Virus record (IMG/VR): IMGVR_UViG_3300023083_000001
Location: 124,001 to 188,000 of that record
Length of the DNA stretch: 64,000 nucleotides
Reading direction: 5' to 3' (one strand)
A program made the position numbers and the translations under genes. Within the stretch, counting starts at the first letter, position 1; every line of letters begins with the position of its first letter. Of this stretch, positions 29,601 to 44,661 are shown one piece after another. The notes below the pieces were generated by a model. That model was given only the letters and a program-made list of their open reading frames with translations. It was not told the origin of the DNA and made no database searches.

Positions 29601-32600
29601 ACGCTTCTCACCACGAATCTCCGAGAGGTCAGCTGCATCTTCCAGCAGGCTAGATTCCCCAGCTTCTTCAGTGGCTTCGACTAAGTCGTCCAGTTTGTGA
29701 TCGAGATTCTTGTTCAGTTTCTCGATGGCTTCGATGATGTCGGCATTGTCACTGGCTGCTGCGCTGTCTTTACCCTCAGCCGCTTCTTTACGACGTTTGA
29801 GGATATCTTGCCATGACCAATCGCGAGAACCATCCCCGTCCACGTCACCATGGACCCCTTCCTTATCCCACTTGTTTCTCAGGAAGCTCAGGATCGATTG
29901 CTGGGTTTTCAACTGCTCGCCTTGAATCTCTACGGCAGCGATTGCCAGTTCATCATCCAGCATTCCAACAGCTGCACCTCGGCCACGACCTTTATTGAAG
30001 AGGCTGCCGATACCACTGCCGATTGCTTTCGCACCTTTCCACAGCCCTTTATAGAAACCGAGAGCAAGCTTCCCGTAAGCCTTAGCACCTTTGAGGGCAA
30101 GCTTACCAATACCAACACCAAGGTTGATGCCAGCACGGCCCACCGTGAAGAGCACAGAACCGTTACGGGTGTAGAAGGACTTGTACTTATCAATCTCTTC
30201 CTGACTGACAATCTCACGAAGCTCTTTGTCACCCGGTTCCATCATGTAGACTGGACCTTTGATGTCTTTGAGGGACATGATCGGCGCGCCGTCTTTATCC
30301 CGGTACACGCCTTTCTTCATCAAGACAGAACGGATACGTGGTTCTTCATCACCAGGTAGATACGCATCGAACTGAGCAAATTGGTCAACGAGTGTTTGTG
30401 CGCCCCATTTAGCAGCTTTCCACATCAACCCGTAAGTACCACCAACGTAAGCCTTTACACCACGAGCAGCCAGGCCGGTCAGCGCAGCACCTTTACGCAG
30501 ACCCCATCCAGCCAGAGATTCACCCTTGCCGTTATAGAGACCTTTGTCGAAGTCTTCCTGCGTCAGTACGAGTTCGTCAGAATCGACGTTCTGCACCGGA
30601 CCGGTAATATCCTTGATCGATTCGATGACCTTCTTGCTGTTGACGTCAAAGTACTTACCCTTGCGGATATCTCTGGCTGTCATGACAGGTTCTGGATCAC
30701 CCAACAGATGGACATCTGAAACGCCCAAGCCGTTGATGCTACCGAATGGAAGCTTGGCTGCACCTAATGCTGCACGTGTTCCCAGACCCAGGCCTTTGCC
30801 GATCATGCCGTAAGTAAAGCCGAAGTATTTACCCAGCCCGCGAGCAGTGCCAGTGATTGCCCCACCGATAACCTTCCTTGCAGAAGGACGACGTTGCCAC
30901 CAGCGCTTACCACCGGCTTCAGCAGGCGCTTCGTCAGGTGTGGATGGACTCGCATCAGGTGTAGCTGCCGCGGCAGCCTCAGGACCATCCAGAGACGCTT
31001 CGAGGATGTACTCAAGCCACTGATTGGATTGCTGACTGAGCGACAGCATGTTATCCAACCGAAGATGTGTCTCAACATCAGACGTCATCAGCAGATCAGG
31101 CCATTCCACAGAGGCTTGTACTTGCACCGACTGAGGGACGACTGGCGCTGTGCCGATTGGGCTCGGTCTAGGTTTTATTGGACGGTTGTCAACAACTGGA
31201 ACACCCTGCTGTGGTTTGCCGGTGGCTTGTTGTTCACGTTCTTTCTGTAAACGTTTGCGCTCGTACTCAGCTTTCTGCTTGACGCGTTCCTGAATGCTGC
31301 CTGTGTAAACAGGTTTGTCTTCAGGTTTGTTGGTGAGGTCTTTCTCTTCACCTTCATTAACGATCAAGTCGTTAAGCGCGTCCATGTCGATGACGTCGTT
31401 GTAATCGCCGTTGTGTCTGGACAAGCCCAGTTCACGCCAGCTGCGACGACCCACCACGTTTTGCAGAACATCCATCCGACCACCAAAGTCAGGCAGACGT
31501 TCGGACAACTCAAGAAACTTACTGCGTGTCGATGCGGTAAGGTCTTGGGTCTTCTGAGAATTGTCGATCTGATTACCACCTGGATCCAGACCAAACGTAT
31601 CGGCGAAGAAGTCAATCAACTCCTCAGCAATTTCCTCAGGTACGGTGTTCCAGGTGTTGACCTTGACGTAACGCTCCGGTTTGAAGTCGTTAGCCGCAGT
31701 CATGTCTTTCATCAACTGACGACGCAAAGCACGTTTAGCTTCAACCGACAGATCGTTAGCGTTCATCTCACGCAGGATGCTATCGACCTCGGAACGAATC
31801 CCTTGACCGTTGTTATCCTTGAGCGCTAGGCGCACGTGTGACTTGTTCAGCTCGCTACGATTGACCAAGCTGTTACTGTAGTGGCTGTAGGCTTGTTCTT
31901 CTTGGTCCTCACCCGTTGCCAGGATACCCAGCTTCCTGTCCATGCTTGCCAAGAAGCTTGGAATGACATCCGTAACGGCACGGTGAAACATGTTGTCAAA
32001 GATAGCTGGCTGATCCAGCGAGTCAAGTTTCGCACCCTGGACGCTGGACGTAGGGGAGTGGCGGTCGAGCAATGCCTTGATCGCTTCTTCGCCAAGACCC
32101 AACAGACCTTCACGAGTAGTGTCGCTTTTGGCGTACTCGTTCAGACGTTGTGGGATACCGGTGAGGTTCTTACGCAGCCAGTTGCCCCCGGCCTGCACAC
32201 CTGGGATCTGTTCGATGTACGGAGCCGCTTTATCAGCCAACGTACCGCCAAGCAGTTCAAGACCACTGGAAGCTGCATCACCAATTAGCCCACCTGCCAT
32301 GGTACCAAACATCTGGGCACGGGTTTGGCCGAACTGTTCACCTTGACCCAGTTGTTGATGGACTTCTATTGCGCCGCTGAGCAGATCCCCTGCATTCTTC
32401 TTGATGCCGTTGAAGTAGTTGGAGGTGAAGTTACCCGCCGAACGCATCGCACCCGCAGCCAGTCGCTGTTGCAACTGTTGCTTGAGCACTTCAGTGGAGC
32501 GCATCTTGACGAAGTCAGGAAGCCCGGTGTTCTTCTGAATACCATCCAGATACGTCTTGGACAGGGAGAAGAACTCCTGCTGCGCTTTGAGCGTACGGAT

Positions 32601-33272
32601 CGAGACGTCGAGGTGACGGTACTTCAGCTCCAGCGATTTACGCTGGTAGTTGATAGTGACAGAATCCTGATACCCGACCAGACGGCCAATACCACGACCC
32701 ATGGTGGTGAGTACATCCATCTCGCTGGCGAAACGTTTGTTTTCACGGGTATCTTTGACGGCGTCACGGAATTCGCTTTTGACTTTGTCGTTAGCTTGTT
32801 GGGCAAACAACTTGTCCAAGCCAGCAATGTTGCTGGTCAGTTCGTCAGGCTGGCTATCACCTGACCCGGTGCTGTGATCATTCTCAGCCGCTTCTAATGC
32901 ATCGCGTACACTTTTAGGAAGAGCACGCTTTACCGCTGGACTCATCTGCGCGAACTTGACGTTCATGGAACGCAGGTATGGCTGAAGATCGGTAGCCTTA
33001 TCTTTCAGGATATCGCCAGCGGCATTGTCCAGCGCATCGTATGCGTTGAAAGCCTGGCTGTAGCCTTTAGGCAATGCCATTGCAAGCATACGGCGCAATA
33101 GGCCCTTATCCAGCATACGGTCTTTAACCGTACTGATCGCACTTTTCGCAGCCGCTTCTATCGGCGACCGATTGTCGCTACTGGGTGCAAAGGGATCACT
33201 AAAGTCGAGATCGTCGAAGTTCAGATCGTCAAGATCATCCGTCCCAAGATCGACATTATCCTTATTAGCCAT
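26640..33272 (-). CDS. Tail-associated lytic transglycosylase / tape-measure-like protein (phiKZ gp181-like)
   Basis: About 2210 aa; SLT motifs IESRWDPKA..GLFQFIGSTW..YMAHFLG near the C-terminus; Gly/Ala transmembrane stretch; start probably 33272. Confidence 0.9.
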   Translation of the reverse strand: MANKDNVDLGTDDLDDLNFDDLDFSDPFAPSSDNRSPIEAAAKSAISTVKDRMLDKGLLRRMLAMALPKGYSQAFNAYDALDNAAGDILKDKATDLQPYLRSMNVKFAQMSPAVKRALPKSVRDALEAAENDHSTGSGDSQPDELTSNIAGLDKLFAQQANDKVKSEFRDAVKDTRENKRFASEMDVLTTMGRGIGRLVGYQDSVTINYQRKSLELKYRHLDVSIRTLKAQQEFFSLSKTYLDGIQKNTGLPDFVKMRSTEVLKQQLQQRLAAGAMRSAGNFTSNYFNGIKKNAGDLLSGAIEVHQQLGQGEQFGQTRAQMFGTMAGGLIGDAASSGLELLGGTLADKAAPYIEQIPGVQAGGNWLRKNLTGIPQRLNEYAKSDTTREGLLGLGEEAIKALLDRHSPTSSVQGAKLDSLDQPAIFDNMFHRAVTDVIPSFLASMDRKLGILATGEDQEEQAYSHYSNSLVNRSELNKSHVRLALKDNNGQGIRSEVDSILREMNANDLSVEAKRALRRQLMKDMTAANDFKPERYVKVNTWNTVPEEIAEELIDFFADTFGLDPGGNQIDNSQKTQDLTASTRSKFLELSERLPDFGGRMDVLQNVVGRRSWRELGLSRHNGDYNDVIDMDALNDLIVNEGEEKDLTNKPEDKPVYTGSIQERVKQKAEYERKRLQKEREQQATGKPQQGVPVVDNRPIKPRPSPIGTAPVVPQSVQVQASVEWPDLLMTSDVETHLRLDNMLSLSQQSNQWLEYILEASLDGPEAAAAATPDASPSTPDEAPAEAGGKRWWQRRPSARKVIGGAITGTARGLGKYFGFTYGMIGKGLGLGTRAALGAAKLPFGSINGLGVSDVHLLGDPEPVMTARDIRKGKYFDVNSKKVIESIKDITGPVQNVDSDELVLTQEDFDKGLYNGKGESLAGWGLRKGAALTGLAARGVKAYVGGTYGLMWKAAKWGAQTLVDQFAQFDAYLPGDEEPRIRSVLMKKGVYRDKDGAPIMSLKDIKGPVYMMEPGDKELREIVSQEEIDKYKSFYTRNGSVLFTVGRAGINLGVGIGKLALKGAKAYGKLALGFYKGLWKGAKAIGSGIGSLFNKGRGRGAAVGMLDDELAIAAVEIQGEQLKTQQSILSFLRNKWDKEGVHGDVDGDGSRDWSWQDILKRRKEAAEGKDSAAASDNADIIEAIEKLNKNLDHKLDDLVEATEEAGESSLLEDAADLSEIRGEKRGRKGRKPGIKPKGRLARAGSWIGKKLGKIPGVGAIGRGIGYAAPLVGGALWSGAAAIGSGLATAGTAVVSALGLPLILGAAAVAGIGYLGYRYYKSSQAKKFPLLYLRMTQYGVAPTNQERVEKIIQLESLCRSGVDIGRDGTAQLDPSKIDIQAVLKVFSISDPDQQESMFRWMSSRFRPVFLAHCTAMQRIRQTAELSSADQGIGNGDLDSFLNVVDLGNMQDIYNDTSTSPFDSSLDTDADDVADAVKMVRSRREDKQTDEIANVAGAVAAGSVEVAARNATVGVSRDGTGSAAEIAKGLEVAAAAASSIPGAVYGGVAPAVSQLKSLDIPTAVRYKTYGLKEMNLSKCQQLQKVEEVYWGTIQYSGTSKAVMGGDSVALEQKVSDIFRPADENQKADMLRWLNYRFIPVMLQYAISVRRRYNGDARDGARNLTGTLMHEVLDEVTRTMADTMMGQTSVWTITNSPWPGFELETLPGSVKAYLDVLDQQDENKVMNVQGLATAKRIAGAEASYGTTLTNTALGNQRSSSVSPGVGQTGPTLANYGKIYSGKQVAGGAPGETSKGVADGSLLMVGPKGTKVEHPGGGTGGDINSLPDASGKGWGAMGPLIQAAAKMVGFDPVIAGNVAGIESRWDPKASSGIANGLFQFIGSTWRSMIKKYGATYGIDPNTPPTDPRANAILGACYLKENYEGLSKTLGGSVSDLDLYMAHFLGLGGAKRFLSAPKNVPAHTVVGNGQAGMANDVVKNNASVFIGKTGPRSVGEVLGEMDRRMNDVRKTVGGPLSPVAATVAATDVPAGPTPTDTAPANPTPGGALETPEGGAQVVDDGSGPVTVSQAVAQTPPTPMEVAAAANGGASGTPTGAPPSVGATMPVSETTTTGNEPVIPTSIAGAAVPAPSPTRNMATVAQNTQVAQQANTFDTITPILQKHLEVSMSMDETLRQMLRNQLQALQNSPAAKPLVAANTPEPMQRQPMDTRRTNAVT

Positions 33273-35033: not shown

Positions 35034-38000
35034 ATGGCCGAATTGTTACCCATTGAGAGTTATAATCGGCGCTTCAGTCTGTTTAAAACCAGCCAACTGG
35101 ATGCGCCGGTGGTTTATCCGATTGCACGGATCAGCCTGCCCAAACTCTCTGCTCTGCATTTCGTGACATTGGATGGCGTGACTGTAGGTCCTCAGTCCTC
35201 TGATCCTCTGATGCGATCGATCCCTGGTGTGGTGTACGTCGACCACTTGACAACGTACCACTCACCGATCGGTAACCCGATCAAAGCTTTCACCAGTCCA
35301 GATGCATTGATCAACAACTATCGTCGTGTCAACCGTGCCTTCAGACCTCTGCGTAACTTGGATCGTCTGGAAACTGACACACGGTCGTTGGTGATCTTCA
35401 ACTACTCGATCCTGGCGCATGTTGTTAAATACGCCTTGAGCTTTCGGGCCAGTTACTTTGCCTGGTACAACGTTTATAAGGAAGTGGTCACCAACGTCAA
35501 TCGGATTGCTGAAATCAGCAACCGTAATCAGTTTATCGAGATCAACCTGCCTGACCGCATTCCTTCGCTCAGTGATCTGCGCGAATACGCGGTGCGGCAA
35601 ACCAGCGACACGTTGGGCAAGTTCCGTTCTCCTGAGTTGAAGACGTTTGCTGATCTGTTCATGTGGGCAGGTAAAACACGCAACGCCAGTCTGCTGGGTA
35701 AGATCGATCCTAAACACTACAGCAAGGTCAACTTGCTGGTTCGTCGTTTGAATGGTTGGGTCGTGATCAATCTGGGTTGGCTGGATCAGTTCCGCAAAGG
35801 TGATGAAGTCAGTCTGGAGTCCAAGCTTGAGTCTGCGGTCGATATCACTAAGTCCCTGGAAACCCTGGGTTTTGAATCGGTCGACTATTCGGTTGAAGCG
35901 GTTAACATGGCGCCACAGTTGTTTCAGCTGCGTATGCTGAAAATGCTGACGGTCATTCATCAGGCCACCAGTCCAATTGCGACACAGACTGCGGCTAACG
36001 TCATTGACGAACCTCTGGTTGAGAACAACCTGGATGATGACGAGAAGATCGACGCACTAGATCTCTCATTCCAAGATGAACCTTACGTTCCTGAAAGTGA
36101 TGAGTTGGGGGATGATGAACTCAGCTTGGCGGCTCTTGAGAAAGAGTTGGAAGAACTGGACCACATCAAGGAACTGAGTCAGGGCGTTGAATCAATTGAC
36201 GATGACGATAACGTAGTCGATGCCAAGTCTGTCGACGTGGACATGTTCAGCCAGAATGGTGGGATTGTTGCGAAGGAAGGCGAAGCACTGATCCGTAAGG
36301 CTGATGAGCTGGCTGCCCAAGGATTGTTGACGCCGGCTGAATGGCGGCGTCTGATGCGTGTGTCGGAAGTCTTTGAGAACCTCCCTAACCCTTACGGCGG
36401 TGGTGAGACAATCAAGGAAGGCATGGTTACCAGTCAAGAGGATATCCTGATCAAACCTGAGGTCTTAACGACCGATGCGGTGGTGACGGACAAGTCTCTG
36501 GCCAGTAGCCGTGTTGACATCATGGAACGTCAGTACATCGACAAGGTCCTCAAGAAAGACATCCTGCGCTGCGTGACGTCCATGCAGAAAGCGGCGGTGG
36601 CGATCACGGGTTACTCGATTGACCGTTTCACGGATTTGACCAACGACAAAGAAACCCACACTGTCCGGTTCACTCCGGTGGTCGGTGTCCCATCTACCAT
36701 CAAGTTCGACATTCCGGTTCTAAAGCCTGACGGTACGTTCCTGTACAACGGCACCAACTACCGCATGCGTAAGCAACGGTCGGACTTGCCAATCCGTAAG
36801 GTCTCTCCAACACGGGTTGCTTTGTCAAGCTACTACTCGAAGGTCTTTGTCGAAAGGTCTGAGCGTAAGACATTCAACTATGGCAAATGGCTGATCGATC
36901 GTTTGATCATCAAATGCCAGGACCGTGAAGATCCGTACGTCTCTGACGCTGTGGTTCGTCGCGCGGTCGATCGCAAGGCCGATGTCCCGTTGATGTACTC
37001 GACCATCGCTGAGCGGATTGCATCCTTTAAGGTTGGTGGTTTGCAGCTGTGGTTTGATTACCGTCAGCGTGTCGAGAAGTTTGATTACACCAAAGAAGAA
37101 CGTGCGTTCGAGAAGAAGGGTTGGGTACTGTGTGGTCGTGAGACTTCAGGTCAAGCGCTGATCATGGACCCAAGCGGTATGATCTATCGGATCATCCCTG
37201 ACGCTCAAGGTGGTACGGCTCACGAACTCGATACGATTGAATCGCTGACCGGCTTGGATACAGCGGACACACCAACCTACATGGCGGAGATGAAGATCTA
37301 CTCCAAAGCTATTCCGGTGGGTGTGGGTCTGGCTTACCTGTTGGGCTTGAGCGGCTTGATAGAATTGGTGGGTGTGCAGCCACGTCGTGTTCCTGTGGGT
37401 GAACGTCTGAACACTCAGGCGGATGAGTTTGCAATACGCTTTAAGAACGAATCGTTGTTGTTCAAACGCAGTGACATGAAAGCCATGATGTTGTTCAGTG
37501 GCTTTAACCTGTACCACGCTCTGGTCCGTACCTACGACGTCGATCTGTTTGATCAGAAAGATGTTTACAGTGCAATCTTTGACCGGGCAGGTGTGGGTAG
37601 TCGTTACCTGCGTGAGATCGACTCGCTCAACACGTTGTTCGTCGACCCTATCACGGAAGATCTATTGAAGTGGATGAAGGAACCTACCACTTACGTCGGC
37701 CTGTTGGTTCGTTCTGTGGAAATGCTGGTCAACGATACGGTCAAGGCCCGTCGGGTAGATCGTGATGGTCTGGTAGAAAGTCTGGAACGTGTACGTGGTT
37801 ACGAACGTGTTGCTGGTGTGGTGTATGAAACGTTGTCTAAGGCTGTGCGTTTGTATAACGCTCGGGCCAGTACCGGTAAGTCTTCGGTGCAGGTCAATCC
37901 AAACGACACGATGAACACCATCATCCAGGATCCAACCACTTCACCTGTCAACAACATCAACCCTATCCACGCCTTGCGTGAACGGGAAGTGATCACCTTC

Positions 38001-39377
38001 GGTGGTCGTGGTGGTCGTAGTCGTCGGGCGATGGTTGCATCGACGCGTTTGTTTACCGATGAAGACATGGGCTTTATCTCCGAAGGTACGGTTGACTCTG
38101 GTGACGTGGCTATTATCACTTACCTGTCTCCGAACTCGAACGTGACGTCAGTACGCGGTACGGTGCGGATGTATGACGCCAAACGTGACGGTGCTTCGTC
38201 GATCATGTCCACTGCGGCTCTGCTGAGTTTTGGTGCAGACGGCGATGATCCGAAACGTGTGAACTTTATCACAGTGCAACACGGCCACGGGATTCAATCG
38301 GCTGGTGGTGAAGTGCAGGGCGCTCGGACGGGTATGGAGCGAGTCATTGCTTCCAGGATGACGCCTGAGTTTGCCACGACTGCTAAAGGTCCTGGTGAAA
38401 TCACAGAGCTGTCAGAGAACCACTTGGTAGTAACGTACAAGGACGGTGTCATCGATCGTTTCCCATTGGGTCTGCTACACACGAGCGCTGAGGGTTCTAC
38501 TTACCCGAACACGATCAAGACCGGTTTGAAGTTGGGTGACAAGGTTGAGCAGTATGACGTCATGACTTACAACGCCGGGTTCTTCAAACCAAGTTCTATC
38601 GATAAACGTCGTGTGGACTACATGAACGGTTGCGTAGGTCGGGTAGCACTTCGTGAAGCAACGTACACCGTAGAAGACAGTAGTTCTTTGGCGGTAGCGT
38701 TCGCTCAACGGATGACTACGTTGGTGTCCAAGCCTAAAACGATCATCGTTGATTTCCGTGAAGGTGTGGAAGGGTTGGTTAAAGTCGGCGATAAGGTTGA
38801 CCTTGATACAATTCTATGCACCATCCAGGGCGCTGTTTCGTCTGATGCTGGCCTCTATGACGATGCGACTCGCGAGACTCTGGCACGTTGGGCTGCGATG
38901 GCTCCAAGAGCCAAAGCTGTCGGGGTGGTTGCCAAGATCGATGTCATGTACAACGGTGACATTGACGACATGTCGGAAACCTTGCAGGTCATCGCATCGG
39001 AATCTGAACGTGAACGCAAACGTTCCGCCAGGCGCTTGGGTGAGGAATATCGCACCGGTCAAGTACCACGTCAAGTCAGGATCGATGGGCATAATCTGGA
39101 ACGTGACCAGGCTATCATCATGGTTTACATCACCACTCCTGTTGCCATGGGTATCGGCGATAAGCTGGTGATTGCTAATCAGATGAAGAGTACCGTCGGT
39201 GAGATCCTCTTTGGAGACAACCGAACAGTAGAAGGTGAGACGATCGATCTGATCTTCGGAGCCAAGTCTTGCGTCGACCGGATTGTTACCAGTCCTTTCA
39301 CGATCGGTACAACCAACACTGTCCTGCGGTTCATCGGGGAAGAAGCCTTCAAGATGTATTTTGAAGGTAAAGAGTAA
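35034..39377 (+). CDS. Virion RNA polymerase beta subunit, N-terminal part (phiKZ gp178-like)
   Basis: DGTFLYNG, EGTVDSGDV, DDPKR, TGME, EDS, GDKL...QMKSTVG, IDLIF; uninterrupted. Confidence 0.92.
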   Translation: MAELLPIESYNRRFSLFKTSQLDAPVVYPIARISLPKLSALHFVTLDGVTVGPQSSDPLMRSIPGVVYVDHLTTYHSPIGNPIKAFTSPDALINNYRRVNRAFRPLRNLDRLETDTRSLVIFNYSILAHVVKYALSFRASYFAWYNVYKEVVTNVNRIAEISNRNQFIEINLPDRIPSLSDLREYAVRQTSDTLGKFRSPELKTFADLFMWAGKTRNASLLGKIDPKHYSKVNLLVRRLNGWVVINLGWLDQFRKGDEVSLESKLESAVDITKSLETLGFESVDYSVEAVNMAPQLFQLRMLKMLTVIHQATSPIATQTAANVIDEPLVENNLDDDEKIDALDLSFQDEPYVPESDELGDDELSLAALEKELEELDHIKELSQGVESIDDDDNVVDAKSVDVDMFSQNGGIVAKEGEALIRKADELAAQGLLTPAEWRRLMRVSEVFENLPNPYGGGETIKEGMVTSQEDILIKPEVLTTDAVVTDKSLASSRVDIMERQYIDKVLKKDILRCVTSMQKAAVAITGYSIDRFTDLTNDKETHTVRFTPVVGVPSTIKFDIPVLKPDGTFLYNGTNYRMRKQRSDLPIRKVSPTRVALSSYYSKVFVERSERKTFNYGKWLIDRLIIKCQDREDPYVSDAVVRRAVDRKADVPLMYSTIAERIASFKVGGLQLWFDYRQRVEKFDYTKEERAFEKKGWVLCGRETSGQALIMDPSGMIYRIIPDAQGGTAHELDTIESLTGLDTADTPTYMAEMKIYSKAIPVGVGLAYLLGLSGLIELVGVQPRRVPVGERLNTQADEFAIRFKNESLLFKRSDMKAMMLFSGFNLYHALVRTYDVDLFDQKDVYSAIFDRAGVGSRYLREIDSLNTLFVDPITEDLLKWMKEPTTYVGLLVRSVEMLVNDTVKARRVDRDGLVESLERVRGYERVAGVVYETLSKAVRLYNARASTGKSSVQVNPNDTMNTIIQDPTTSPVNNINPIHALREREVITFGGRGGRSRRAMVASTRLFTDEDMGFISEGTVDSGDVAIITYLSPNSNVTSVRGTVRMYDAKRDGASSIMSTAALLSFGADGDDPKRVNFITVQHGHGIQSAGGEVQGARTGMERVIASRMTPEFATTAKGPGEITELSENHLVVTYKDGVIDRFPLGLLHTSAEGSTYPNTIKTGLKLGDKVEQYDVMTYNAGFFKPSSIDKRRVDYMNGCVGRVALREATYTVEDSSSLAVAFAQRMTTLVSKPKTIIVDFREGVEGLVKVGDKVDLDTILCTIQGAVSSDAGLYDDATRETLARWAAMAPRAKAVGVVAKIDVMYNGDIDDMSETLQVIASESERERKRSARRLGEEYRTGQVPRQVRIDGHNLERDQAIIMVYITTPVAMGIGDKLVIANQMKSTVGEILFGDNRTVEGETIDLIFGAKSCVDRIVTSPFTIGTTNTVLRFIGEEAFKMYFEGKE

Positions 39378-39438: not shown

Positions 39439-39630
39439 ATGTCTCCAACGGAATTGAATAACCTGCCTATCGTTGGCACCGCTATCCAGCTTATCAGCGA
39501 GATCGCTCTGGAGGTCGTTGGTAACGACGTGGCGTCTGAAGTAGGCGGTCAGAAGATCACTCAATCGTCTGTCAAGATCCTGGCAGCCGCTTCCCTGAAC
39601 AAAGTACTGAGCGAGAAACTTTATGCTTGA
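39439..39630 (+). CDS. Small hypothetical protein (63 aa)
   Basis: GAGGT SD before ATG 39439; the longer track ORF overlaps the RNAP gene and the hairpin. Confidence 0.6.
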   Translation: MSPTELNNLPIVGTAIQLISEIALEVVGNDVASEVGGQKITQSSVKILAAASLNKVLSEKLYA

Positions 39631-41017
39631 TCCAAACGCTCTCAGCGCCGCGATCGCCGTGGTGCAGGACCAAGGTAGCCGTGGAGTGATGCTTGGTACT
39701 GTCGCTGACACTCCACTCTCTCTTCTGGTACGCGATACACCAATCATCGGTATCGATGCGCAAGCCTCGAACTACGATTCGGTTATCGCGACCATGGTCG
39801 ACATCAGCCGCGATCCGGCTCACGCCGCTACCATGCAAGACGTCGTACAGCTGGCCGCAGGCGGCGTACGTCGTTCGTTGGACTTCACCCGTAATACGGT
39901 CATGCCGCATTTGCGCAACTTGATCGAACAATACGGCGTCAGCATCCAAGCCATGGGCGCTGCTCCCCTGCCGTACGACATGGACATCGTTTACCAGCCT
40001 GAGGTTTACAAGACCTCCGTCGCTGCTGCATTCCTGGAACGTTGGGAAGCTGTCCCTGCCATGAGTGCACCTGCACCCGTGTCGTTGGGTCTGTACACGC
40101 CTGAAGAAATCTTTGCACTGGCCAAGCTGACTGATGATGGTGGTTTCAACACCTCTCTCGAGAAGCTGCTCAACGCCAATGAAGGTCGTGGTGTCCAGGC
40201 TATCATCAATGTCATTAAAGGCATTGATTCGGTCACCTCGATCGATGACAACTACGCCTTACCTTTGGCGTTGGTGCTTGCCAACATGGACACGCCGAAA
40301 GAAGGCGTGCAGATGACGTACAGCAACTACAACAGCACACGTGCCTTACTGGCCATGTTGGCTGGTAAGAAAGCGCTGAATGTGATTGCACGTCTGAATC
40401 ACGCACTCAATGTAAACGGTATCTACATGCCGGGTATGTTGGTAGCGGGTAAGATCAACCTGTGTGGTGAAGTCTACAAAACCATGCTGGACAAAGGTCT
40501 GACCGCTGAAGCGTTGATCGGTAACGAACTGCTCAATCGCAAGTATCGTTCGCTGCAACTGACTGACCCTGCGGTGATTGCTGAACTGACCGAAGTCTAC
40601 AACCGTGATCGCGGTGTGCGTGAGCAGGCTTATCTGCTGACCAAGCGTCAACGTGCTCGTACTGTTCTGATGAACGTGCTGCGTGAAGACCAGAAGCGCA
40701 TTGCTGCATCTGGCGAGTTCACCGTTGAAGGCGACACTGCTGAGAAGTCCTGGGGGCGTTTGAAAGATTTCCTCGACAAGCTCATGACTACGCTGTGGGC
40801 AGATTCCGAGCCTACCACGTTGATCGCTGCGGCAACCTGCGCTGTCTGGTACGCACACACCGATGCTTCGAAGATCATCGACATCATGTTCGACATCGAG
40901 AAGTCCAATCCTGGTCTGCCTTCCAAAGAAGTCGCGACCCTGGCTACCTTGCGTTACATCAGCGAATGGGTTGCCAGTCAGATCGTAGTTGGTGGTAATC
41001 CTGCTGAAGGCGTCTGA
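39623..41017 (+). CDS. Conserved phiKZ-like protein (gp177-like position)
   Basis: 464 aa; synteny between vRNAP and protease genes. Confidence 0.6.
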   Translation: MLDPNALSAAIAVVQDQGSRGVMLGTVADTPLSLLVRDTPIIGIDAQASNYDSVIATMVDISRDPAHAATMQDVVQLAAGGVRRSLDFTRNTVMPHLRNLIEQYGVSIQAMGAAPLPYDMDIVYQPEVYKTSVAAAFLERWEAVPAMSAPAPVSLGLYTPEEIFALAKLTDDGGFNTSLEKLLNANEGRGVQAIINVIKGIDSVTSIDDNYALPLALVLANMDTPKEGVQMTYSNYNSTRALLAMLAGKKALNVIARLNHALNVNGIYMPGMLVAGKINLCGEVYKTMLDKGLTAEALIGNELLNRKYRSLQLTDPAVIAELTEVYNRDRGVREQAYLLTKRQRARTVLMNVLREDQKRIAASGEFTVEGDTAEKSWGRLKDFLDKLMTTLWADSEPTTLIAAATCAVWYAHTDASKIIDIMFDIEKSNPGLPSKEVATLATLRYISEWVASQIVVGGNPAEGV

Positions 41018-41027
41018 GGGCTGAGTC

Positions 41028-41750
41028 ATGCGAGCATCTGACTACAAGCGCTCGAAGACCCGTGTGGATGCCTGCTTGAAACGAGTAGGCGATTCCCTCA
41101 TTGCTCTGGAACCTTTGCGGATTCACATCCCTGAACGTTTTGCTGAGCGTGATCTAGCTGTGATTGAGGACGTCTCATGCGTCCTCGGTTTCCTGGCGAT
41201 CATCACTGAGGACAACTATTACGCAGCGTCCACGGTTACGGGGATGTTCTACACTGACCCAGATCGGGTTGGACGCTGCGTGGTGGATGACAAGGGTTAC
41301 ATCGAGCTAAGTTACGATAAAGGTTCACGGGTTATCTCCAACACCAACATCGTAATGATCGACAACATGATCCATCGGGTTTATACCGAGATGTACGGTA
41401 AGGGTAACATTCCGTGGTATTACAGCTACGAAGACCTACCGCGCATGTTTTACGAGACAGGTAAGTACAACGGCGTGAAGCTGGGTGCCGATCTGTCGAT
41501 CCTGGAGTACGCCGCAGCGCAGTTGTGCCGTGATCCAGACGATCCTACCAAATACTACCGTCAACGTCCTAACGCCAAGGCTGAGAGCGTCACAAACCCA
41601 CCTTACTTCGTAGGGTTGCGGAACGTGGCCTTTGGTGCAACTAACCTTGCATCCAAACTTCCTGGTTCTTATTTCGATGATGGCATGACTAGCGTGTTGA
41701 CGCGTCCATCCGATCGCAGTGAGCGACTGGAGACGATGCTTCGGCAATAA
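41028..41750 (+). CDS. Conserved phiKZ-like protein (gp176-like position)
   Basis: Synteny, directly before the protease; GNIPWY..YRQ..GSYF motifs. Confidence 0.6.
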   Translation: MRASDYKRSKTRVDACLKRVGDSLIALEPLRIHIPERFAERDLAVIEDVSCVLGFLAIITEDNYYAASTVTGMFYTDPDRVGRCVVDDKGYIELSYDKGSRVISNTNIVMIDNMIHRVYTEMYGKGNIPWYYSYEDLPRMFYETGKYNGVKLGADLSILEYAAAQLCRDPDDPTKYYRQRPNAKAESVTNPPYFVGLRNVAFGATNLASKLPGSYFDDGMTSVLTRPSDRSERLETMLRQ

Positions 41751-41761
41751 AGGAATTCATC

Positions 41762-42556
41762 ATGGCCAACGTTGCAATGCTTCAACAGAGTGGCCCGGTT
41801 ACGTCTTACAGCAACATTGCTTTGGCAGGCAGTTGTAAGCAGGGCATCCTCAAAAAACTCGACAATGGTTACTGCGAAATTATCCTCGGTGCGTTTGCAG
41901 CGTTTGGTAATGGTGGCTGGTTGTACGATGCGCGCACCGCCATGCGCTACATCGAGCAGGATCGAGACTTCCTGGCGTTGCTTCAGTCAGGTCGTCTGCG
42001 CAGTGAGTGGGGTCACCCGCGCCGTCTACCGGGTATGACTGACCAAGACTGGTTCATCCGTATCTGCGAGATCATGGAGAACAACGTTTCTTCTCACATC
42101 CGCAAGATCAGTGTTTCGATGAACACTGTGCGTGATGAGCGTGGTCGTATGGTTGTGGCTGTGATCGGTGAGGTTCGTCCATCGGGTCCTCATGAAGGCA
42201 GCTTCCAGCGCATGCTGGATAACCCGGATGAAGATGTCAACTATTCCATCCGCTGTTTTGCCAACAAAAACTTCAAGATGATGACCAAGCACATCAACCG
42301 GATCATCACTTGGGACAGCGTGTTCGACCCTGGTATCAAGGTCGCCACCAAGTACAAAACGCCAAGCCTGGAATCGCGTGCGGTTACTCAGGTGTTGGAC
42401 GATGTCGAGTTCAACCTCGACCAGTTGCGCCAAGGTCTTCTTGATCCTGCCAACGCAGCCAGCTTTGAGAACATGTCACCGTTCGTCAAGGTACTCGATG
42501 GTCTTTACGAAGACACTCGCGTCAGTATCGCAATGCCAACCACTTTGAAATGGTAA
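41762..42556 (+). CDS. Prohead protease (phiKZ gp175-like)
   Basis: EWGHP (catalytic His), NVSSHI, YSIR (catalytic Ser), TWD.V..PGI; C-terminal SLE/SFE autocleavage-type sites. Confidence 0.9.
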   Translation: MANVAMLQQSGPVTSYSNIALAGSCKQGILKKLDNGYCEIILGAFAAFGNGGWLYDARTAMRYIEQDRDFLALLQSGRLRSEWGHPRRLPGMTDQDWFIRICEIMENNVSSHIRKISVSMNTVRDERGRMVVAVIGEVRPSGPHEGSFQRMLDNPDEDVNYSIRCFANKNFKMMTKHINRIITWDSVFDPGIKVATKYKTPSLESRAVTQVLDDVEFNLDQLRQGLLDPANAASFENMSPFVKVLDGLYEDTRVSIAMPTTLKW

Positions 42557-42586: not shown

Positions 42587-43996
42587 ATGGACCTGAGCCA
42601 ACTGATGCGAGACTACGCCGTTGAAAGCGGCGAGATGATCGTAGAACAAGTACCTGAGAATACTCAGGAGATGTTGAACGATCTGTTGATTCAAGAAACC
42701 ATCGCCGCTGGCGAGCCGACTGTTACTGCTCAGCTGGATCAGGCTGAAACCAGCGAAGACATCGCTGATCAGTTGGACGACCTGGCTGATCGCGCTGACG
42801 CAGTCATCGCTACCCAGGCTGATCCTGAAACCGCAGTATCCGCCGATGTGCTCAACGTCTCGATCGAATCGCTGCACCGCGAGTTCAACGTCGTCATGCG
42901 TGCTCACAAACTGCAAGAGGTCTTCAAGGCTTCCAGCTTTGAATCCGCTGGCAGCGACAGTGATCGCCTGACCGGTTTGGCAGCTGATGCTCGCCGCACC
43001 GCTGTGGTTACCCGCGGTCACGCTAAAGCACTGAAGGATCTCAGTGCTGAAGCAGGCGACATCCTGCGCTTCCTGCGTCAGGACAAAGCACGTTTGCAGA
43101 AAGCCAACGCGACTTTGGGCGCAGCCGTGGGTAAGTTGAACGGTCAATTGGCTGATCTGAAAGATGATCCGAAGATCATCAACCACGAAGGCATTGGTCG
43201 TTGGTTGACCGTGGAAGGCAAGCCGATCAAGAGCTTGAAAGACGCGGTTGAAGACGAAGCCAAATGGCTGGGTAAAGCGCACGACGCGGTTGATAAACTG
43301 GTGACCGAGTTGAAAGTCGCCGCGACCAAGCTCAAGGGCGACCCAACCCTCAGCGTCGATACGTTGCTGCCTGCCTCGATGTTCACGGCTGTCAACGGCC
43401 TGAGCACTGGTACCGGTGCGCTGATGGGTAACATCACCATCACGGGCGTAAGCACTGGCGAGAAAGTTTTCAAATACAAACGCGAGAACGAGTTCGTCGT
43501 CAGCAAAGGTAAAATTGCCAAAGCTGTCGGCTGGGGCATATTGGCAACTATCGGTTGGGGATTGGTCGGTGGTCTCGGCATCGCTATCGGTGGCGTCTTG
43601 ACTGGCGGTCTTATTTCAGGATTGGCTGGGACCTCGGTTGGGGTGGCGGCCACTAACCTGGCTGTTCGGACGGCTGGTGCGGTTTCTGCCGCCAAGTCTT
43701 ACGATGAAGATGTCAATAAATCTGAAGCTCAATCGGTGGCTAACCCTTCCGATCTGAAATCGGCATTGACCACGATCTTGGGTTACACCAAGTTCACCAA
43801 CTTCCACATGGATGTGGATGGTACTGGCGAACTTGTACAGATGTTGGATGCTATTGACGAGTTCAAAGGGGCTCGCGTCGCCTCTGGCGCCATCTTCGAT
43901 GCACTGAGTCGCTGCATGGAGATCTCTGAGATCATCTACGATCAAGCTATCTACACTACCACCAGCGCCGCTACACTGGCTTCTAAAGCAGTCTAA
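42587..43996 (+). CDS. Internal head (ejection) protein with acidic propeptide and Gly-rich hydrophobic segment
   Basis: Acidic N-terminus with AVE/SIE/SFE/SAE sites; GWGILATIGWGLVGGLGIAIGGVLTGGLISGLAG segment. Confidence 0.7.
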   Translation: MDLSQLMRDYAVESGEMIVEQVPENTQEMLNDLLIQETIAAGEPTVTAQLDQAETSEDIADQLDDLADRADAVIATQADPETAVSADVLNVSIESLHREFNVVMRAHKLQEVFKASSFESAGSDSDRLTGLAADARRTAVVTRGHAKALKDLSAEAGDILRFLRQDKARLQKANATLGAAVGKLNGQLADLKDDPKIINHEGIGRWLTVEGKPIKSLKDAVEDEAKWLGKAHDAVDKLVTELKVAATKLKGDPTLSVDTLLPASMFTAVNGLSTGTGALMGNITITGVSTGEKVFKYKRENEFVVSKGKIAKAVGWGILATIGWGLVGGLGIAIGGVLTGGLISGLAGTSVGVAATNLAVRTAGAVSAAKSYDEDVNKSEAQSVANPSDLKSALTTILGYTKFTNFHMDVDGTGELVQMLDAIDEFKGARVASGAIFDALSRCMEISEIIYDQAIYTTTSAATLASKAV

Positions 43997-43997
43997 G

Positions 43998-44048
43998 CGA
44001 CATAGTCCCCTCCTACTGGCGTGAACCAGTAGGAGGGGCTTTATGCTG
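43998..44048. terminator. CATA..TATG-type hairpin
   Basis: CCCCTCCTACTGG-CGTGAA-CCAGTAGGAGGGG then CTTTATGCTG. Confidence 0.7.
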
Positions 44049-44072: not shown

Positions 44073-44098
44073 TATGGTCACACATTGTAGTATTAGAC
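44073..44098 (+). promoter_or_regulatory. Putative early promoter
   Basis: TATGGTCACACATTG-TAGTAT-TAGA. Confidence 0.5.
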
Positions 44099-44124
44099 AC
44101 AGGCAACAATCAGAGGAAATTGGC

Positions 44125-44661
44125 ATGTTCCCCAGAGAGCCAGCAACTTACATCATGACACATCGCCCATCTGGCGTGTATTACATTGGTTCTACAGGTA
44201 ATCTTAATTTAAGAGTAGCTCAACACAAATACAAAATCATTAACGGGGAACATAACTCAACGCAGTTCAAAGCACTCTCATCGCGTTGGGAAGATATTTC
44301 TATCGAGTATGAACTTGCGGTTGATTACCACAACGCTGAGAGTCTAGAAATAGCTCTACTGAAAACAAACATCAAAGACCCATTGTGTTCTAACGCAATG
44401 ACCACTGTCCAAGAATGGGCTAAGGCTACCACGCACTTTGACGAAGCTCGTCGTAAATCAGCTGACACGCGGAGGGGTAAACCCAGAGATGAGTTGACTC
44501 GTTCTAAAATAAGCGCGGCTAAGAGTCGCCGTATAGTTGGCGACGGAGTCGAATACGCATCAGCGTTGGAAGCTTCTCAGAAATTAGGAATACCGTACAG
44601 AACTGTTCGATCTAGATTGGGCAGTAATAATGGCTTAGGTAAGCTCTGGTACTACTTGTAA
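44125..44661 (+). CDS. Free-standing GIY-YIG homing endonuclease with NUMOD3 and HTH tail
   Basis: ATYIMTHRPSGVYYIGSTGNL..R...H, conserved Glu, RSKISAAK, EYASALEASQKLGI; more AT-rich than flanking genes; GAGGA SD before ATG 44125. Confidence 0.88.
   Translation: MFPREPATYIMTHRPSGVYYIGSTGNLNLRVAQHKYKIINGEHNSTQFKALSSRWEDISIEYELAVDYHNAESLEIALLKTNIKDPLCSNAMTTVQEWAKATTHFDEARRKSADTRRGKPRDELTRSKISAAKSRRIVGDGVEYASALEASQKLGIPYRTVRSRLGSNNGLGKLWYYL

What the first reader, a model, noticed from the sequence alone, without database searches (positions are those of the whole stretch)
42587..43996. Internal head protein carrying a glycine-zipper membrane hairpin
Seen: a propeptide with (S/A)-X-E sites typical of ejected head proteins, plus about 50 uncharged residues with repeated GxxxG (about 43520-43690). 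Known: nucleus-forming phages enclose injected DNA in an early membrane vesicle, and its protein builders are poorly defined. Inference: an ejected membrane-inserting protein acting as vesicle former, pore or exclusion factor, encoded next to the protease.
Basis: partly seen in the sequence, partly recalled or inferred. Interest (0 to 1): 0.6.

Follow-up and report, generated by a model that had tools for sequence, protein, structure and literature searches.

The report
Protease-cut phage head protein, hydrophobic hairpin
This gene of an uncultivated phiKZ-like giant phage encodes a head protein that the neighbouring capsid protease probably trims, and its unusual greasy glycine/alanine-rich loop makes it a reasonable but untested candidate for acting on host membranes after injection.

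Summary
ORF 42587-43996 (+) encodes 469 aa directly after a Peptidase_S80 (phiKZ gp175-type) prohead protease. Residues 313-360 form a 48-residue uncharged Gly/Ala-rich stretch.

The raw motif counts are not above chance ([SAG]-x-E: 7 seen, 8.3 expected; GxxxG: 5 seen, 3.6 expected). Conservation is what makes them real:
- In a 78-member family, four sites are kept: E13 66/78, E94 61/78, E119 74/78, E155 64/78. All lie in the N-terminal third.
- 60/78 members keep a strong hydrophobic stretch around a conserved G-G-x3-G.

The family has no Pfam or PHROG match for this protein. Profiles link it to 201phi2-1 gp193 (a virion protein found by mass spectrometry), Phabio gp182/183 and pPa_SNUABM_DT01 gp098/099. 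Its propeptide resembles that of PF12699 internal head proteins. The AlphaFold model (pLDDT 83) best matches phiKZ gp86 (Z 10.2) and a PF12699 cluster (TM 0.5).

"Processed head-internal protein" is therefore well supported. Ejection, membrane insertion and any role in the early infection vesicle are inference only. Predicted membrane propensity is marginal, and a capsid-bound role like gp86 is a serious rival. SPN3US gp47 is a published precedent. I call it a new variant of a known kind, of moderate interest, testable in DT01 or Phabio.

The parts
42587..43996 (+). CDS of the 469-aa protein (P0001); stop codon included
   Evidence: 93 family representatives at E<=1e-3 in 1.84 billion proteins
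42587..43051 (+). Predicted N-terminal propeptide region (aa 1-155). It is the best conserved part of the family and holds all four conserved cleavage motifs.
   Evidence: mean column identity 0.46 for aa 46-160 against 0.32-0.35 elsewhere; hhalign to PF12699-type paralogues, 91% probability, over aa 40-113
42617..42625 (+). A-V-E13 candidate protease site, followed by S-G-E. It lies in an N-terminal motif shared with two other head proteins of the same genome.
   Evidence: 66/78 conserved; shared N-terminus with P0106 (BLASTP E 3e-4) and similar in a PF12699 paralogue
42860..42868 (+). S-I-E94 candidate protease site (Val at P4, Ser at P1')
   Evidence: 61/78 conserved; V91, E94, S95 invariant among the 9 closest sequences
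42935..42943 (+). S-F-E119 candidate maturation site, the best conserved one
   Evidence: 74/78 conserved; comparable in position to phiKZ gp86 SQE-122 and 201phi2-1 gp148 SQE-113 (PMC5694885)
43043..43051 (+). S-A-E155 candidate protease site
   Evidence: 64/78 conserved; sits in a low-confidence loop (aa 151-157) between helices of the model
43523..43666 (+). 48-residue uncharged Gly/Ala-rich hydrophobic stretch (aa 313-360), modelled as helix-loop-helix at low confidence
   Evidence: pLDDT <50 for aa 322-358 while the rest of the model is confident
43589..43606 (+). Conserved G-G-x3-G core (aa 335-340) of the hydrophobic stretch; likely a hairpin turn or a helix-packing motif
   Evidence: G336 in 66/78 and G340 in 53/78; position 335 is G in 39 and A in 14
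43745..43990 (+). C-terminal helices (aa 387-468) that pack back on the central helices
   Evidence: AlphaFold2 with the 78-sequence alignment, pLDDT 83-96 in this part
41762..42556 (+). Prohead protease (Peptidase_S80, phiKZ gp175 type), 30 nt upstream
41028..41750 (+). phiKZ gp176 / SPN3US gp244-like virion protein
   Evidence: phrog_2926 E 3.8e-66; same order as in phiKZ and SPN3US
39623..41017 (+). phiKZ gp177 / SPN3US gp243-position protein
   Evidence: phrog_3841 E 1e-27; synteny
35034..39377 (+). Large virion RNA polymerase beta-type subunit (phiKZ gp178 position); first gene of the block
   Evidence: synteny with annotated phages; no Pfam hit
44007..44038 (+). 13-bp G+C-rich stem-loop right after the stop codon; likely the end of the transcription unit

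Best explanation
P0001 is a capsid-internal protein of a phiKZ-like (Chimalliviridae-type) jumbo phage, made late as the last gene of the vRNAP-beta / protease block.

Proposed steps:
1. Its conserved N-terminal third acts as a capsid-targeting propeptide.
2. The neighbouring S80 prohead protease cuts it after Glu at A-V-E13, S-I-E94, S-F-E119 and probably S-A-E155.
3. This leaves a mature protein of about 34-37 kDa: a helical bundle with a small beta-sheet, and a protruding Gly/Ala-rich hydrophobic helix-loop-helix of about 50 residues.
4. That loop is hydrophobic enough to partition into a bilayer but too weak to behave as a classical Sec-type membrane anchor. This suits a protein that must stay soluble in the cytoplasm and in the capsid.
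5. Most likely the mature protein leaves the head with the DNA, like PF12699 proteins and as proposed for SPN3US gp47, and then uses the hairpin to associate with or insert into host-derived membrane at the entry site or early infection vesicle.

Shown here: gene context, family, conserved motifs, fold, and homology to a virion protein.
Inferred: the actual cleavage, packaging of this particular protein, ejection, and membrane insertion. My rough estimates are about 0.8 for a processed head protein, about 0.5 for ejection and about 0.35 for membrane action. The single confidence value given for this explanation (0.45) is for the chain as a whole.
For: - Adjacent to and co-directional with the Peptidase_S80 protease, followed by a terminator-like hairpin.
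- The same placement is seen in all 8 loci examined from this clade.
- Four S/A-x-E sites are conserved in 61-74 of 78 homologues and confined to the N-terminal third. They fit the published A-x-E|S logo and the rule that cleavages give N-terminal propeptides (PMC10052503).
- The propeptide is profile-similar to PF12699 proteins. Its N-terminal motif is shared with two other head proteins of this genome.
- Homologous to 201phi2-1 gp193, a virion protein by mass spectrometry (E 2.7e-11), to Phabio gp182 (hhalign 98.5%, 317 columns) and to DT01 gp098/gp099.
- Confident model (pLDDT 83, pTM 0.78). Its best matches are phiKZ head proteins: gp86 at Z 10.2 and a PF12699 cluster at TM 0.50/0.53; BFVD hits are phiKZ-like virion or internal head proteins.
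- The hydrophobic stretch is kept in 60/78 members, although the surrounding region (aa 301-385) has a mean column identity of only 0.33.
- In the four loci with tandem paralogues, one copy is always strongly hydrophobic.
Against: - There are no experimental data for any member that carries the long hairpin.
- The one relative with virion mass-spectrometry evidence (201phi2-1 gp193) lacks the hydrophobic stretch.
- Seven of 78 members, and two protease-adjacent loci (L037, L038), have little or none of it.
- Membrane propensity is marginal, and the second half of the stretch is not predicted to span a bilayer.
- GxxxG frequency is explained by composition.
- The best structural match, gp86, is capsid-bound in the mature phiKZ virion (PMC11297242).
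- Z 10.2 is within the range that helical bundles reach by chance according to the tool's own note.
- There is no fold support for known pore formers.
Confidence: 0.45

Rival explanations
1. It is a capsid-bound minor capsid protein like phiKZ gp86. After propeptide removal it stays attached to the inner face of the shell (vertex-binding complex or inner network). The Gly/Ala-rich stretch is then a protein-protein or flexible packing element, not a membrane element, and the protein is never ejected.
For: - The top structural match among 48,161 PDB representatives is phiKZ gp86: Z 10.2, rmsd 3.4, 200 residues, covering the whole predicted mature part.
- gp86 is also cut near residue 122 and sits on the inner capsid surface (PMC11297242, PMC5694885).
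- The transmembrane propensity of the stretch is marginal, and some members lack it.
Against: - No sequence or profile similarity to gp86.
- The genome already has a gene at the gp86 position (P0107) beside gp84- and gp85-position genes.
- Z 10.2 is not decisive for a helical bundle.
- An exposed uncharged hairpin of about 50 residues is unexplained by a shell-binding role, and the gp86 sequence has no comparable hydrophobic stretch (max KD 1.04).
Confidence: 0.25
2. It acts during assembly as a membrane tether or nucleator. The hairpin would anchor the nascent prohead core to the inner membrane, and protease cuts in the N-terminal third would then release the particle.
For: - All conserved cut sites lie between the conserved N-terminal module and the hydrophobic hairpin.
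- The gene sits next to the protease.
- T4 proheads are released from the membrane after maturation (background in PMC5694885).
Against: - The protease works inside a closed shell, so a tether would have to cross the shell.
- The mature part has a compact fold like retained head proteins.
- The hairpin's predicted insertion propensity is weak for a co-translational anchor.
- A recent preprint describes chimallivirus capsids as assembled in the host cytoplasm (10.64898/2026.04.21.720040).
Confidence: 0.08
3. It is a scaffold or core protein, the missing T4 gp22 counterpart, that is degraded and expelled during maturation.
For: - It sits directly after the protease, as T4 gene 22 follows gene 21.
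- It is helix-rich with several conserved cut sites, and its most conserved region is the cleaved part.
- No scaffold has been confirmed in giant phages (PMC5694885).
Against: - Cut sites are confined to the first 155 residues. About 315 residues stay free of conserved sites and form a compact domain.
- The homologue 201phi2-1 gp193 is present in mature virions.
- The gene is absent from phiKZ, SPN3US, Goslar and others that have the same protease, which is odd for an essential scaffold.
Confidence: 0.07
4. The Gly/Ala-rich stretch is only a low-complexity flexible linker with no membrane or binding role. The protein is an ordinary member of the diverse internal head protein pool.
For: - pLDDT below 50 in aa 322-358.
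- The sequence of the stretch is poorly conserved and varies from 12 to 67 residues.
- The GxxxG count is as expected from composition.
- Some members lack the stretch.
Against: - Charge is strictly excluded over a median of 37 residues in most members, with V/L/I at 30% of the stretch, which is not linker-like.
- G336 and G340 are conserved.
- In the whole 258-kb genome only this protein and the 2210-aa SLT-domain tail protein have such a stretch.
- One strongly hydrophobic copy is kept in each of the four tandem pairs.
Confidence: 0.1

Closest known systems
201phi2-1 gp193, Phabio gp182/gp183 and pPa_SNUABM_DT01 gp098/gp099 (unnamed family; some members hit phrog_24630 'virion structural protein')
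   Same: True homologues by profile (E 2.7e-11, 5.5e-17, 3.4e-6, 6.4e-17; hhalign 98.5% for gp182 and 96.4% for gp099). They share the S/A-x-E sites. gp193 is a virion protein by mass spectrometry. In DT01 the genes sit directly after the protease.
   Different: gp193 has no hydrophobic stretch. Phabio gp182 has one helix of about 22 residues, against 48 residues in P0001. In 201phi2-1 and Phabio the genes lie near the DnaB-like helicase and major capsid genes, not beside the protease.
PF12699 phiKZ_IP internal head / inner body proteins (phiKZ gp92-97, Goslar gp53-58)
   Same: Cut by the same protease type. The propeptide is profile-similar (91%, aa 40-113). Overall fold is similar (TM 0.50/0.53 over 313 residues), and the BFVD hits are of this kind. 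[quoted passage not shown]
   Different: P0001 does not match the Pfam model at all. The PF12699 paralogues of the same genome that were checked (six over the cut-off and three weaker matches) all lack a hydrophobic stretch.
phiKZ gp86 (PDB 8y6v chain G), minor capsid protein of the inner vertex-binding complex
   Same: Best structural match to the predicted mature part (Z 10.2, rmsd 3.4, 200 residues). It is also cut after an S-x-E near residue 120 (PMC5694885, PMC11297242).
   Different: No sequence similarity. No hydrophobic stretch in the gp86 sequence. The genome has a separate gene at the gp86 position. gp86 is capsid-bound in the virion.
SPN3US gp47, an essential head protein proposed to be ejected and to touch the host membrane
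   Same: Same logic: a long N-terminal propeptide cut by the prohead protease, a predicted membrane segment in the mature protein, and a fast-evolving gene (PMC5694885).
   Different: Not homologous. gp47 has one strongly hydrophobic helix at the very start of the mature chain (simple scale -1.2 against +1.4 here). It sits at the gp86 locus, not beside the protease.
Soluble-to-membrane alpha-helical pore formers with a buried hydrophobic hairpin (colicin pore domains, ClyA/Hbl/AhlB family)
   Same: Only by analogy: a helical bundle carrying an uncharged Ala/Gly-rich hairpin of about 40-50 residues, and possible activation by proteolysis. This rests on established knowledge of those families, not on a test here.
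   Different: No fold support: AhlB Z 5.8 (on the N-terminal bundle only), SmhB 5.4, HblL1 4.6, colicin Ia 3.4. Language-model look-alikes are at chance level.

Membership tests
Substrates of phiKZ-type prohead protease (Peptidase_S80) | Cleavage C-terminal to S/A/G-x-E (A-x-E|S logo in SPN3US) that gives an N-terminal propeptide | tested here: met
   Motif level only. Four sites are conserved in 61-74 of 78 homologues, all within aa 1-155; three have Ser at P1' and one has Val at P4 (logo from PMC10052503).
Substrates of phiKZ-type prohead protease (Peptidase_S80) | Cleaved termini seen by semi-tryptic peptides in virions | not testable with these tools
   Needs virion mass spectrometry.
gp193 / gp182 family of phiKZ-like virion proteins (unnamed) | Significant full-length profile homology | tested here: met
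   Profile E 2.7e-11 (201phi2-1 gp193) and 5.5e-17 (Phabio gp182); hhalign 98.5% over 317 columns.
PF12699 phiKZ_IP | Match to the Pfam model above the gathering score (27 bits) | tested here: not met
   No hit even at E<=1. P0001 is not among the 9 matches of the model in its own genome.
PF12699 phiKZ_IP | Shared helix-rich fold | tested here: inconclusive
   TM 0.50/0.53 over 313 residues to a cluster in which 56% of members carry PF12699. hhalign similarity is limited to the propeptide.
phiKZ gp86-type vertex-binding minor capsid protein | Sequence homology, or the gene at the gp84-85-86 locus | tested here: not met
   hhalign probability 0.2%. Another gene (P0107) holds that position.
phiKZ gp86-type vertex-binding minor capsid protein | Same fold | tested here: inconclusive
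   Z 10.2, rmsd 3.4, 200 residues, rank 1 of 48,161 chains, but below the level the tool calls safe for helical bundles.
SPN3US gp47-type ejection protein | Homology to gp47 | tested here: not met
   hhalign probability 0.1%.
Glycine-zipper membrane segment ((G/A/S)xxxGxxxG ladder in a transmembrane helix) | An ordered small-xxx-small ladder beyond what composition gives, in a segment hydrophobic enough to span a bilayer | tested here: inconclusive
   A ladder G336-G340-S344-G348-G352 exists, but the GxxxG count equals the shuffled expectation. Only G336 and G340 are conserved, and insertion propensity is marginal.
ClyA/Hbl/AhlB and colicin-type alpha pore formers | Shared fold | tested here: not met
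   Z 3.4-5.8 on partial alignments; Foldseek E>1.
T4 gp22-type scaffold | Cut into small fragments along its whole length and absent from mature heads | tested here: not met
   Conserved sites lie only in aa 1-155. The homologue gp193 is present in mature 201phi2-1 virions.
Tape measure proteins (phrog_167) | Profile match outside the Gly-rich hydrophobic part | tested here: not met
   P0001 has no hit. Six other members hit weakly (best 1.1e-7); I take these as probably driven by the Gly-rich hydrophobic composition, which was not tested.

The most novel reading that the evidence does not exclude
The mature protein is injected with the genome and, once freed from its propeptide, inserts its hairpin into host-derived lipid. 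[quoted passage not shown] Paralogues with a weak hairpin would act as soluble partners.
Probability: 0.12. Interest if true: 0.85.

Novelty: new variant of a known kind. Interest (0 to 1): 0.45.

Why it matters
Recent reviews name two open questions for nucleus-forming phages: how the early infection vesicle forms, and which proteins give it channels (PMC12908238; 10.64898/2026.04.21.720040).

A virion-packaged, protease-primed protein with a conserved lipid-compatible hairpin is the kind of candidate needed to answer them. This family has cultured representatives in which it can be tested: pPa_SNUABM_DT01 gp099 on P. aeruginosa and Phabio gp182 on P. fluorescens SBW25.

Even if the membrane idea fails, the work has three uses:
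- It defines an unannotated family of about 90 sequence clusters of giant-phage head proteins.
- It shows that the propeptide, not the mature part, is the most conserved region.
- It shows an N-terminal targeting-type motif shared between different head proteins of one phage.

Tried and rejected
- Megablast of the locus and tblastn of P0001, P0077 and P0092 against 50,697 phage records found nothing. tblastn of DT01 gp098 found only itself.
- Pfam and PHROGs gave no credible hit for P0001.
- The first AlphaFold model, from 9 sequences, was poor (pLDDT 64), and its PDB Foldseek search was empty. The model from 78 sequences was good, but Foldseek against PDB was again empty.
- The alpha pore-former idea was tested and dropped as a fold claim.
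- Homology to phiKZ gp86, to the genome's own gene at the gp86 position, and to SPN3US gp47 was tested by hhalign and rejected.
- The family profile found no member in phiKZ, SPN3US, RTH11, LucasX, RP12, Totoro, Noxifer or Goslar. It gave only weak partial matches in PhiEaH1 and Eowyn.
- In several cultured phages (SPN3US, PhiEaH1, Eowyn, RP12, Totoro) the genes after the protease are unrelated proteins of 200-260 aa.
- No virion proteomics exists for DT01 in its description paper. The 201phi2-1 proteolysis paper could not be found in the library.
- The Goslar 'gp193' in the literature is a RecA homologue and is irrelevant.
- Complex prediction, the reads tools and the RNA tools were not used, because no claim here rests on them.
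Full report
**1. What is there**

The window is positions 124001-188000 of a complete 258,357-bp virus record with direct terminal repeats. ORF 42587..43996 (+) encodes 469 aa.

It is the last gene of a co-directional block:
- 35034-39377: a 1447-aa virion RNA polymerase beta-type subunit
- 39623-41017: a gp177-like protein (phrog_3841)
- 41028-41750: a gp176-like virion protein (phrog_2926, E 3.8e-66)
- 41762-42556: a Peptidase_S80 prohead protease (Pfam E 9.4e-57)
- P0001, which starts 30 nt after the protease gene

A 13-bp G+C-rich hairpin follows its stop codon.

phiKZ, SPN3US, RTH11, DT01 and others have the same order up to the protease. The genome also has a chimallin homologue (phmmer E 1.6e-10), homologues of phiKZ gp89, gp90, gp99, gp84 and gp81, and at least six PF12699 internal head protein genes. 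It is therefore a distant phiKZ-like, probably nucleus-forming, jumbo phage. Its protease is at most 43% identical to that of any sequenced phage.

**2. The observation**

Residues 313-360 (nt 43523-43666) carry no D, E, K or R. They are 29% Gly and hold five GxxxG. Seven [SAG]-x-E motifs are present.

Taken alone, neither count exceeds chance:
- [SAG]-x-E: 7 seen against 8.3 +/- 2.4 in shuffles
- GxxxG: 5 seen against 3.6 +/- 1.4, and 25% of shuffles reach 5

Comparison with relatives changes the picture. The word search found 8 metagenomic homologues. The exhaustive profile search found 93 representatives at E<=1e-3 among 1.84 billion proteins. In a 78-sequence alignment:
- The only nearly invariant residues are E13, A70, E94, S117 and E119.
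- S/A/G-x-E motifs ending at E13, E94, E119 and E155 are kept in 66, 61, 74 and 64 of 78 sequences.
- Three of the four sites have Ser at P1', and S-I-E94 has Val at P4. This matches the published logo of the SPN3US protease, whose known cuts all give N-terminal propeptides (PMC10052503).
- Motif density is 4.9 per 100 aa in residues 1-160 and 1.2 per 100 aa afterwards.
- The region with the sites (aa 46-160) is the best conserved part of the family.

The hydrophobic stretch is also a family trait:
- 60 of 78 members have at least 25 uncharged residues with KD of at least 1.6 at the same place; 11 are intermediate and 7 weak.
- The median length is 37 residues.
- Composition is A 23%, G 22%, V 13%, L 10%, I 7%.
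- G336 (66/78) and G340 (53/78) form a conserved G-G-x3-G core.

In the whole genome, only this protein and the 2210-aa SLT-domain tail protein have such a stretch.

**3. What it is related to**

P0001 has no Pfam or PHROG match. Fifteen family members hit phrog_24630 'virion structural protein', and six weakly hit a tape-measure PHROG. I take the tape-measure hits as probably compositional.

The family profile finds these relatives in cultured phages:

| Phage protein | Profile E-value | Note |
|---|---|---|
| pPa_SNUABM_DT01 gp098 | 6.4e-17 | directly after the protease; weak hydrophobic stretch |
| pPa_SNUABM_DT01 gp099 | hhalign 96.4% | 32 uncharged residues, KD 2.13 |
| Phabio gp182 | 5.5e-17; hhalign 98.5%, 317 columns | one hydrophobic helix of about 22 residues |
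| Phabio gp183 | 3.4e-6 | weaker hydrophobic element |
| 201phi2-1 gp193 | 2.7e-11 | no hydrophobic stretch |

The GenBank record of 201phi2-1 gp193 says it was identified as a virion protein by mass spectrometry and is similar to phiKZ gp97.

No member was found in phiKZ, SPN3US, Goslar, Noxifer, RTH11, LucasX, RP12 or Totoro.

A profile-profile comparison with PF12699 paralogues of this genome and phiKZ gp92-96 gives 91% probability, but only over the propeptide (aa 40-113). The first 17 or so residues, ending in A-[VI]-E-S-G-E, recur in a second head-type protein of the genome (P0106, E 3e-4) and in similar form in a true PF12699 paralogue. This behaves like a shared capsid-targeting and cleavage module, comparable in role to the T4 capsid targeting sequence discussed in PMC5694885.

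**4. Structure**

With 78 sequences, AlphaFold2 gives pLDDT 83 and pTM 0.78. The model has:
- long helices at 46-78, 86-106, 124-150, 158-193 and 217-251
- a small beta-sheet at 283-301
- helix 307-321, an unmodelled part (322-358, pLDDT below 50) and helix 354-376
- C-terminal helices to residue 468

An exhaustive structural search puts phiKZ gp86 (8y6v_G) first: Z 10.2, rmsd 3.4, 200 residues, model 147-469 against chain 135-383. gp86 is cut at SQE-122 and lies on the inner capsid surface in the vertex-binding complex (PMC5694885, PMC11297242).

The ESM Atlas search gives TM 0.50/0.53 over 313 residues to a PF12699-rich cluster. BFVD hits are phiKZ-like virion and internal head proteins.

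The aligned model range is about 74 residues longer than the aligned gp86 range (323 against 249 residues). That is close to the length of the hydrophobic part, so the stretch may be an insertion in a head-protein fold, but I could not check where the extra residues fall. The Z value is not decisive for a helical protein (tool note), and there is no sequence similarity to gp86.

Known pore formers score poorly: Z 3.4-5.8.

**5. Paralogues**

In the clade that places the gene after the protease, loci carry one or two copies:
- The window phage and L008 have a single copy, and it is strongly hydrophobic.
- L005, L006, L036 and DT01 each have one strongly hydrophobic copy plus one weak copy.
- L037 and L038 have a single copy with little or no hydrophobic stretch. 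The stretch is therefore frequent but not universal.
- The PF12699 paralogues and weaker PF12699-like matches of this genome that were checked all lack it.

**6. Mechanism**

- Best supported: it is a late, capsid-internal substrate of the prohead protease.
- Inferred: the propeptide targets it to the prohead core, and cleavage at E94 / E119 / E155 leaves a mature protein of about 315-350 residues.
- The stretch has a simple insertion-scale minimum of about +1.4 kcal/mol, and about +4 in its second half, against -1.2 for the SPN3US gp47 helix (scale values from memory). It is thus only marginally hydrophobic. That fits a protein that must stay soluble before use, but it also weakens the claim of a true membrane hairpin.
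- Ejection and membrane action rest on analogy. PF12699 proteins are injected into the early infection vesicle (10.64898/2026.04.21.720040), and SPN3US gp47 was proposed as an ejected, membrane-interacting protein (PMC5694885).
- The main rival is a gp86-like protein that stays bound to the capsid. Lesser rivals are an assembly-time membrane tether, a degraded scaffold and a mere linker.

**7. Novelty and verdict**

The kind is known: a processed head or ejection protein of giant phages, and even one with a membrane segment. The family itself is unannotated. The expanded, conserved Gly/Ala hairpin placed next to the protease is a new variant.

How the early vesicle forms, and what its channels are, remain open questions (PMC12908238). 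That gives the candidate some value, and DT01 gp099 and Phabio gp182 make it testable.

Noticed in passing
window 44074-44661 (+): A GIY-YIG homing-endonuclease-type gene (Pfam PF01541, E 6.2e-7) sits directly after P0001 and its terminator-like hairpin. Related contigs have other genes at this place, so it may be a mobile insertion.
   Followed up: partly
window 26640-33272 (-): A 2210-aa protein with an SLT lytic transglycosylase domain (aa 1835-1921), apparently the counterpart of phiKZ gp181 by size and annotation. It carries the genome's only other long Gly-rich uncharged stretch (aa 1262-1315, 54 residues).
   Followed up: partly
G000:C1:67083-68261 (-) (outside the window; L015 676-1851): A 392-aa protein (P0106) shares the first 17 or so residues with P0001 (motif ending A-I-E-S-G-E). 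It has further S-x-E motifs and a Lys/Ala/Pro-rich middle, and matches PF12699 only weakly (E 7e-5). It is a candidate for another processed core or scaffold-like protein.
   Followed up: partly
G000:C1:233035-236175 (-) (L035): A syntenic set at the phiKZ gp84 / gp85 / gp86 positions. The 443-aa protein at the gp86 position (P0107) starts with a motif ending S-F-E-S-G-E, but has no detectable similarity to gp86 or to P0001.
   Followed up: partly
alignment A2, P0001 residues 46-160: The predicted propeptide is the most conserved part of the family (mean column identity 0.46 against about 0.33 elsewhere). This suggests it has a function in assembly beyond being removed.
   Followed up: no
L005 8001-10844; L006 6650-9392; L036 2131-4895; L001 8772-11332: Tandem paralogue pairs after the protease always combine one strongly hydrophobic copy with one weakly hydrophobic copy, in either order. 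The two copies may work as a pair.
   Followed up: partly
G000:C1:202127-204106 (+): A distant chimallin (phiKZ gp54) homologue (phmmer E 1.6e-10; tblastn 24% identity over 270 aa). This supports a nucleus-forming lifestyle for this uncultivated phage.
   Followed up: partly
L023 1372-2748 (-) (Erwinia phage PhiEaH1, record 199.5-200.9 kb): A 458-aa protein with several S-V-E motifs and a short Ala/Gly-rich segment matches the family profile only weakly (E 2e-4). It may be a very distant relative.
   Followed up: no
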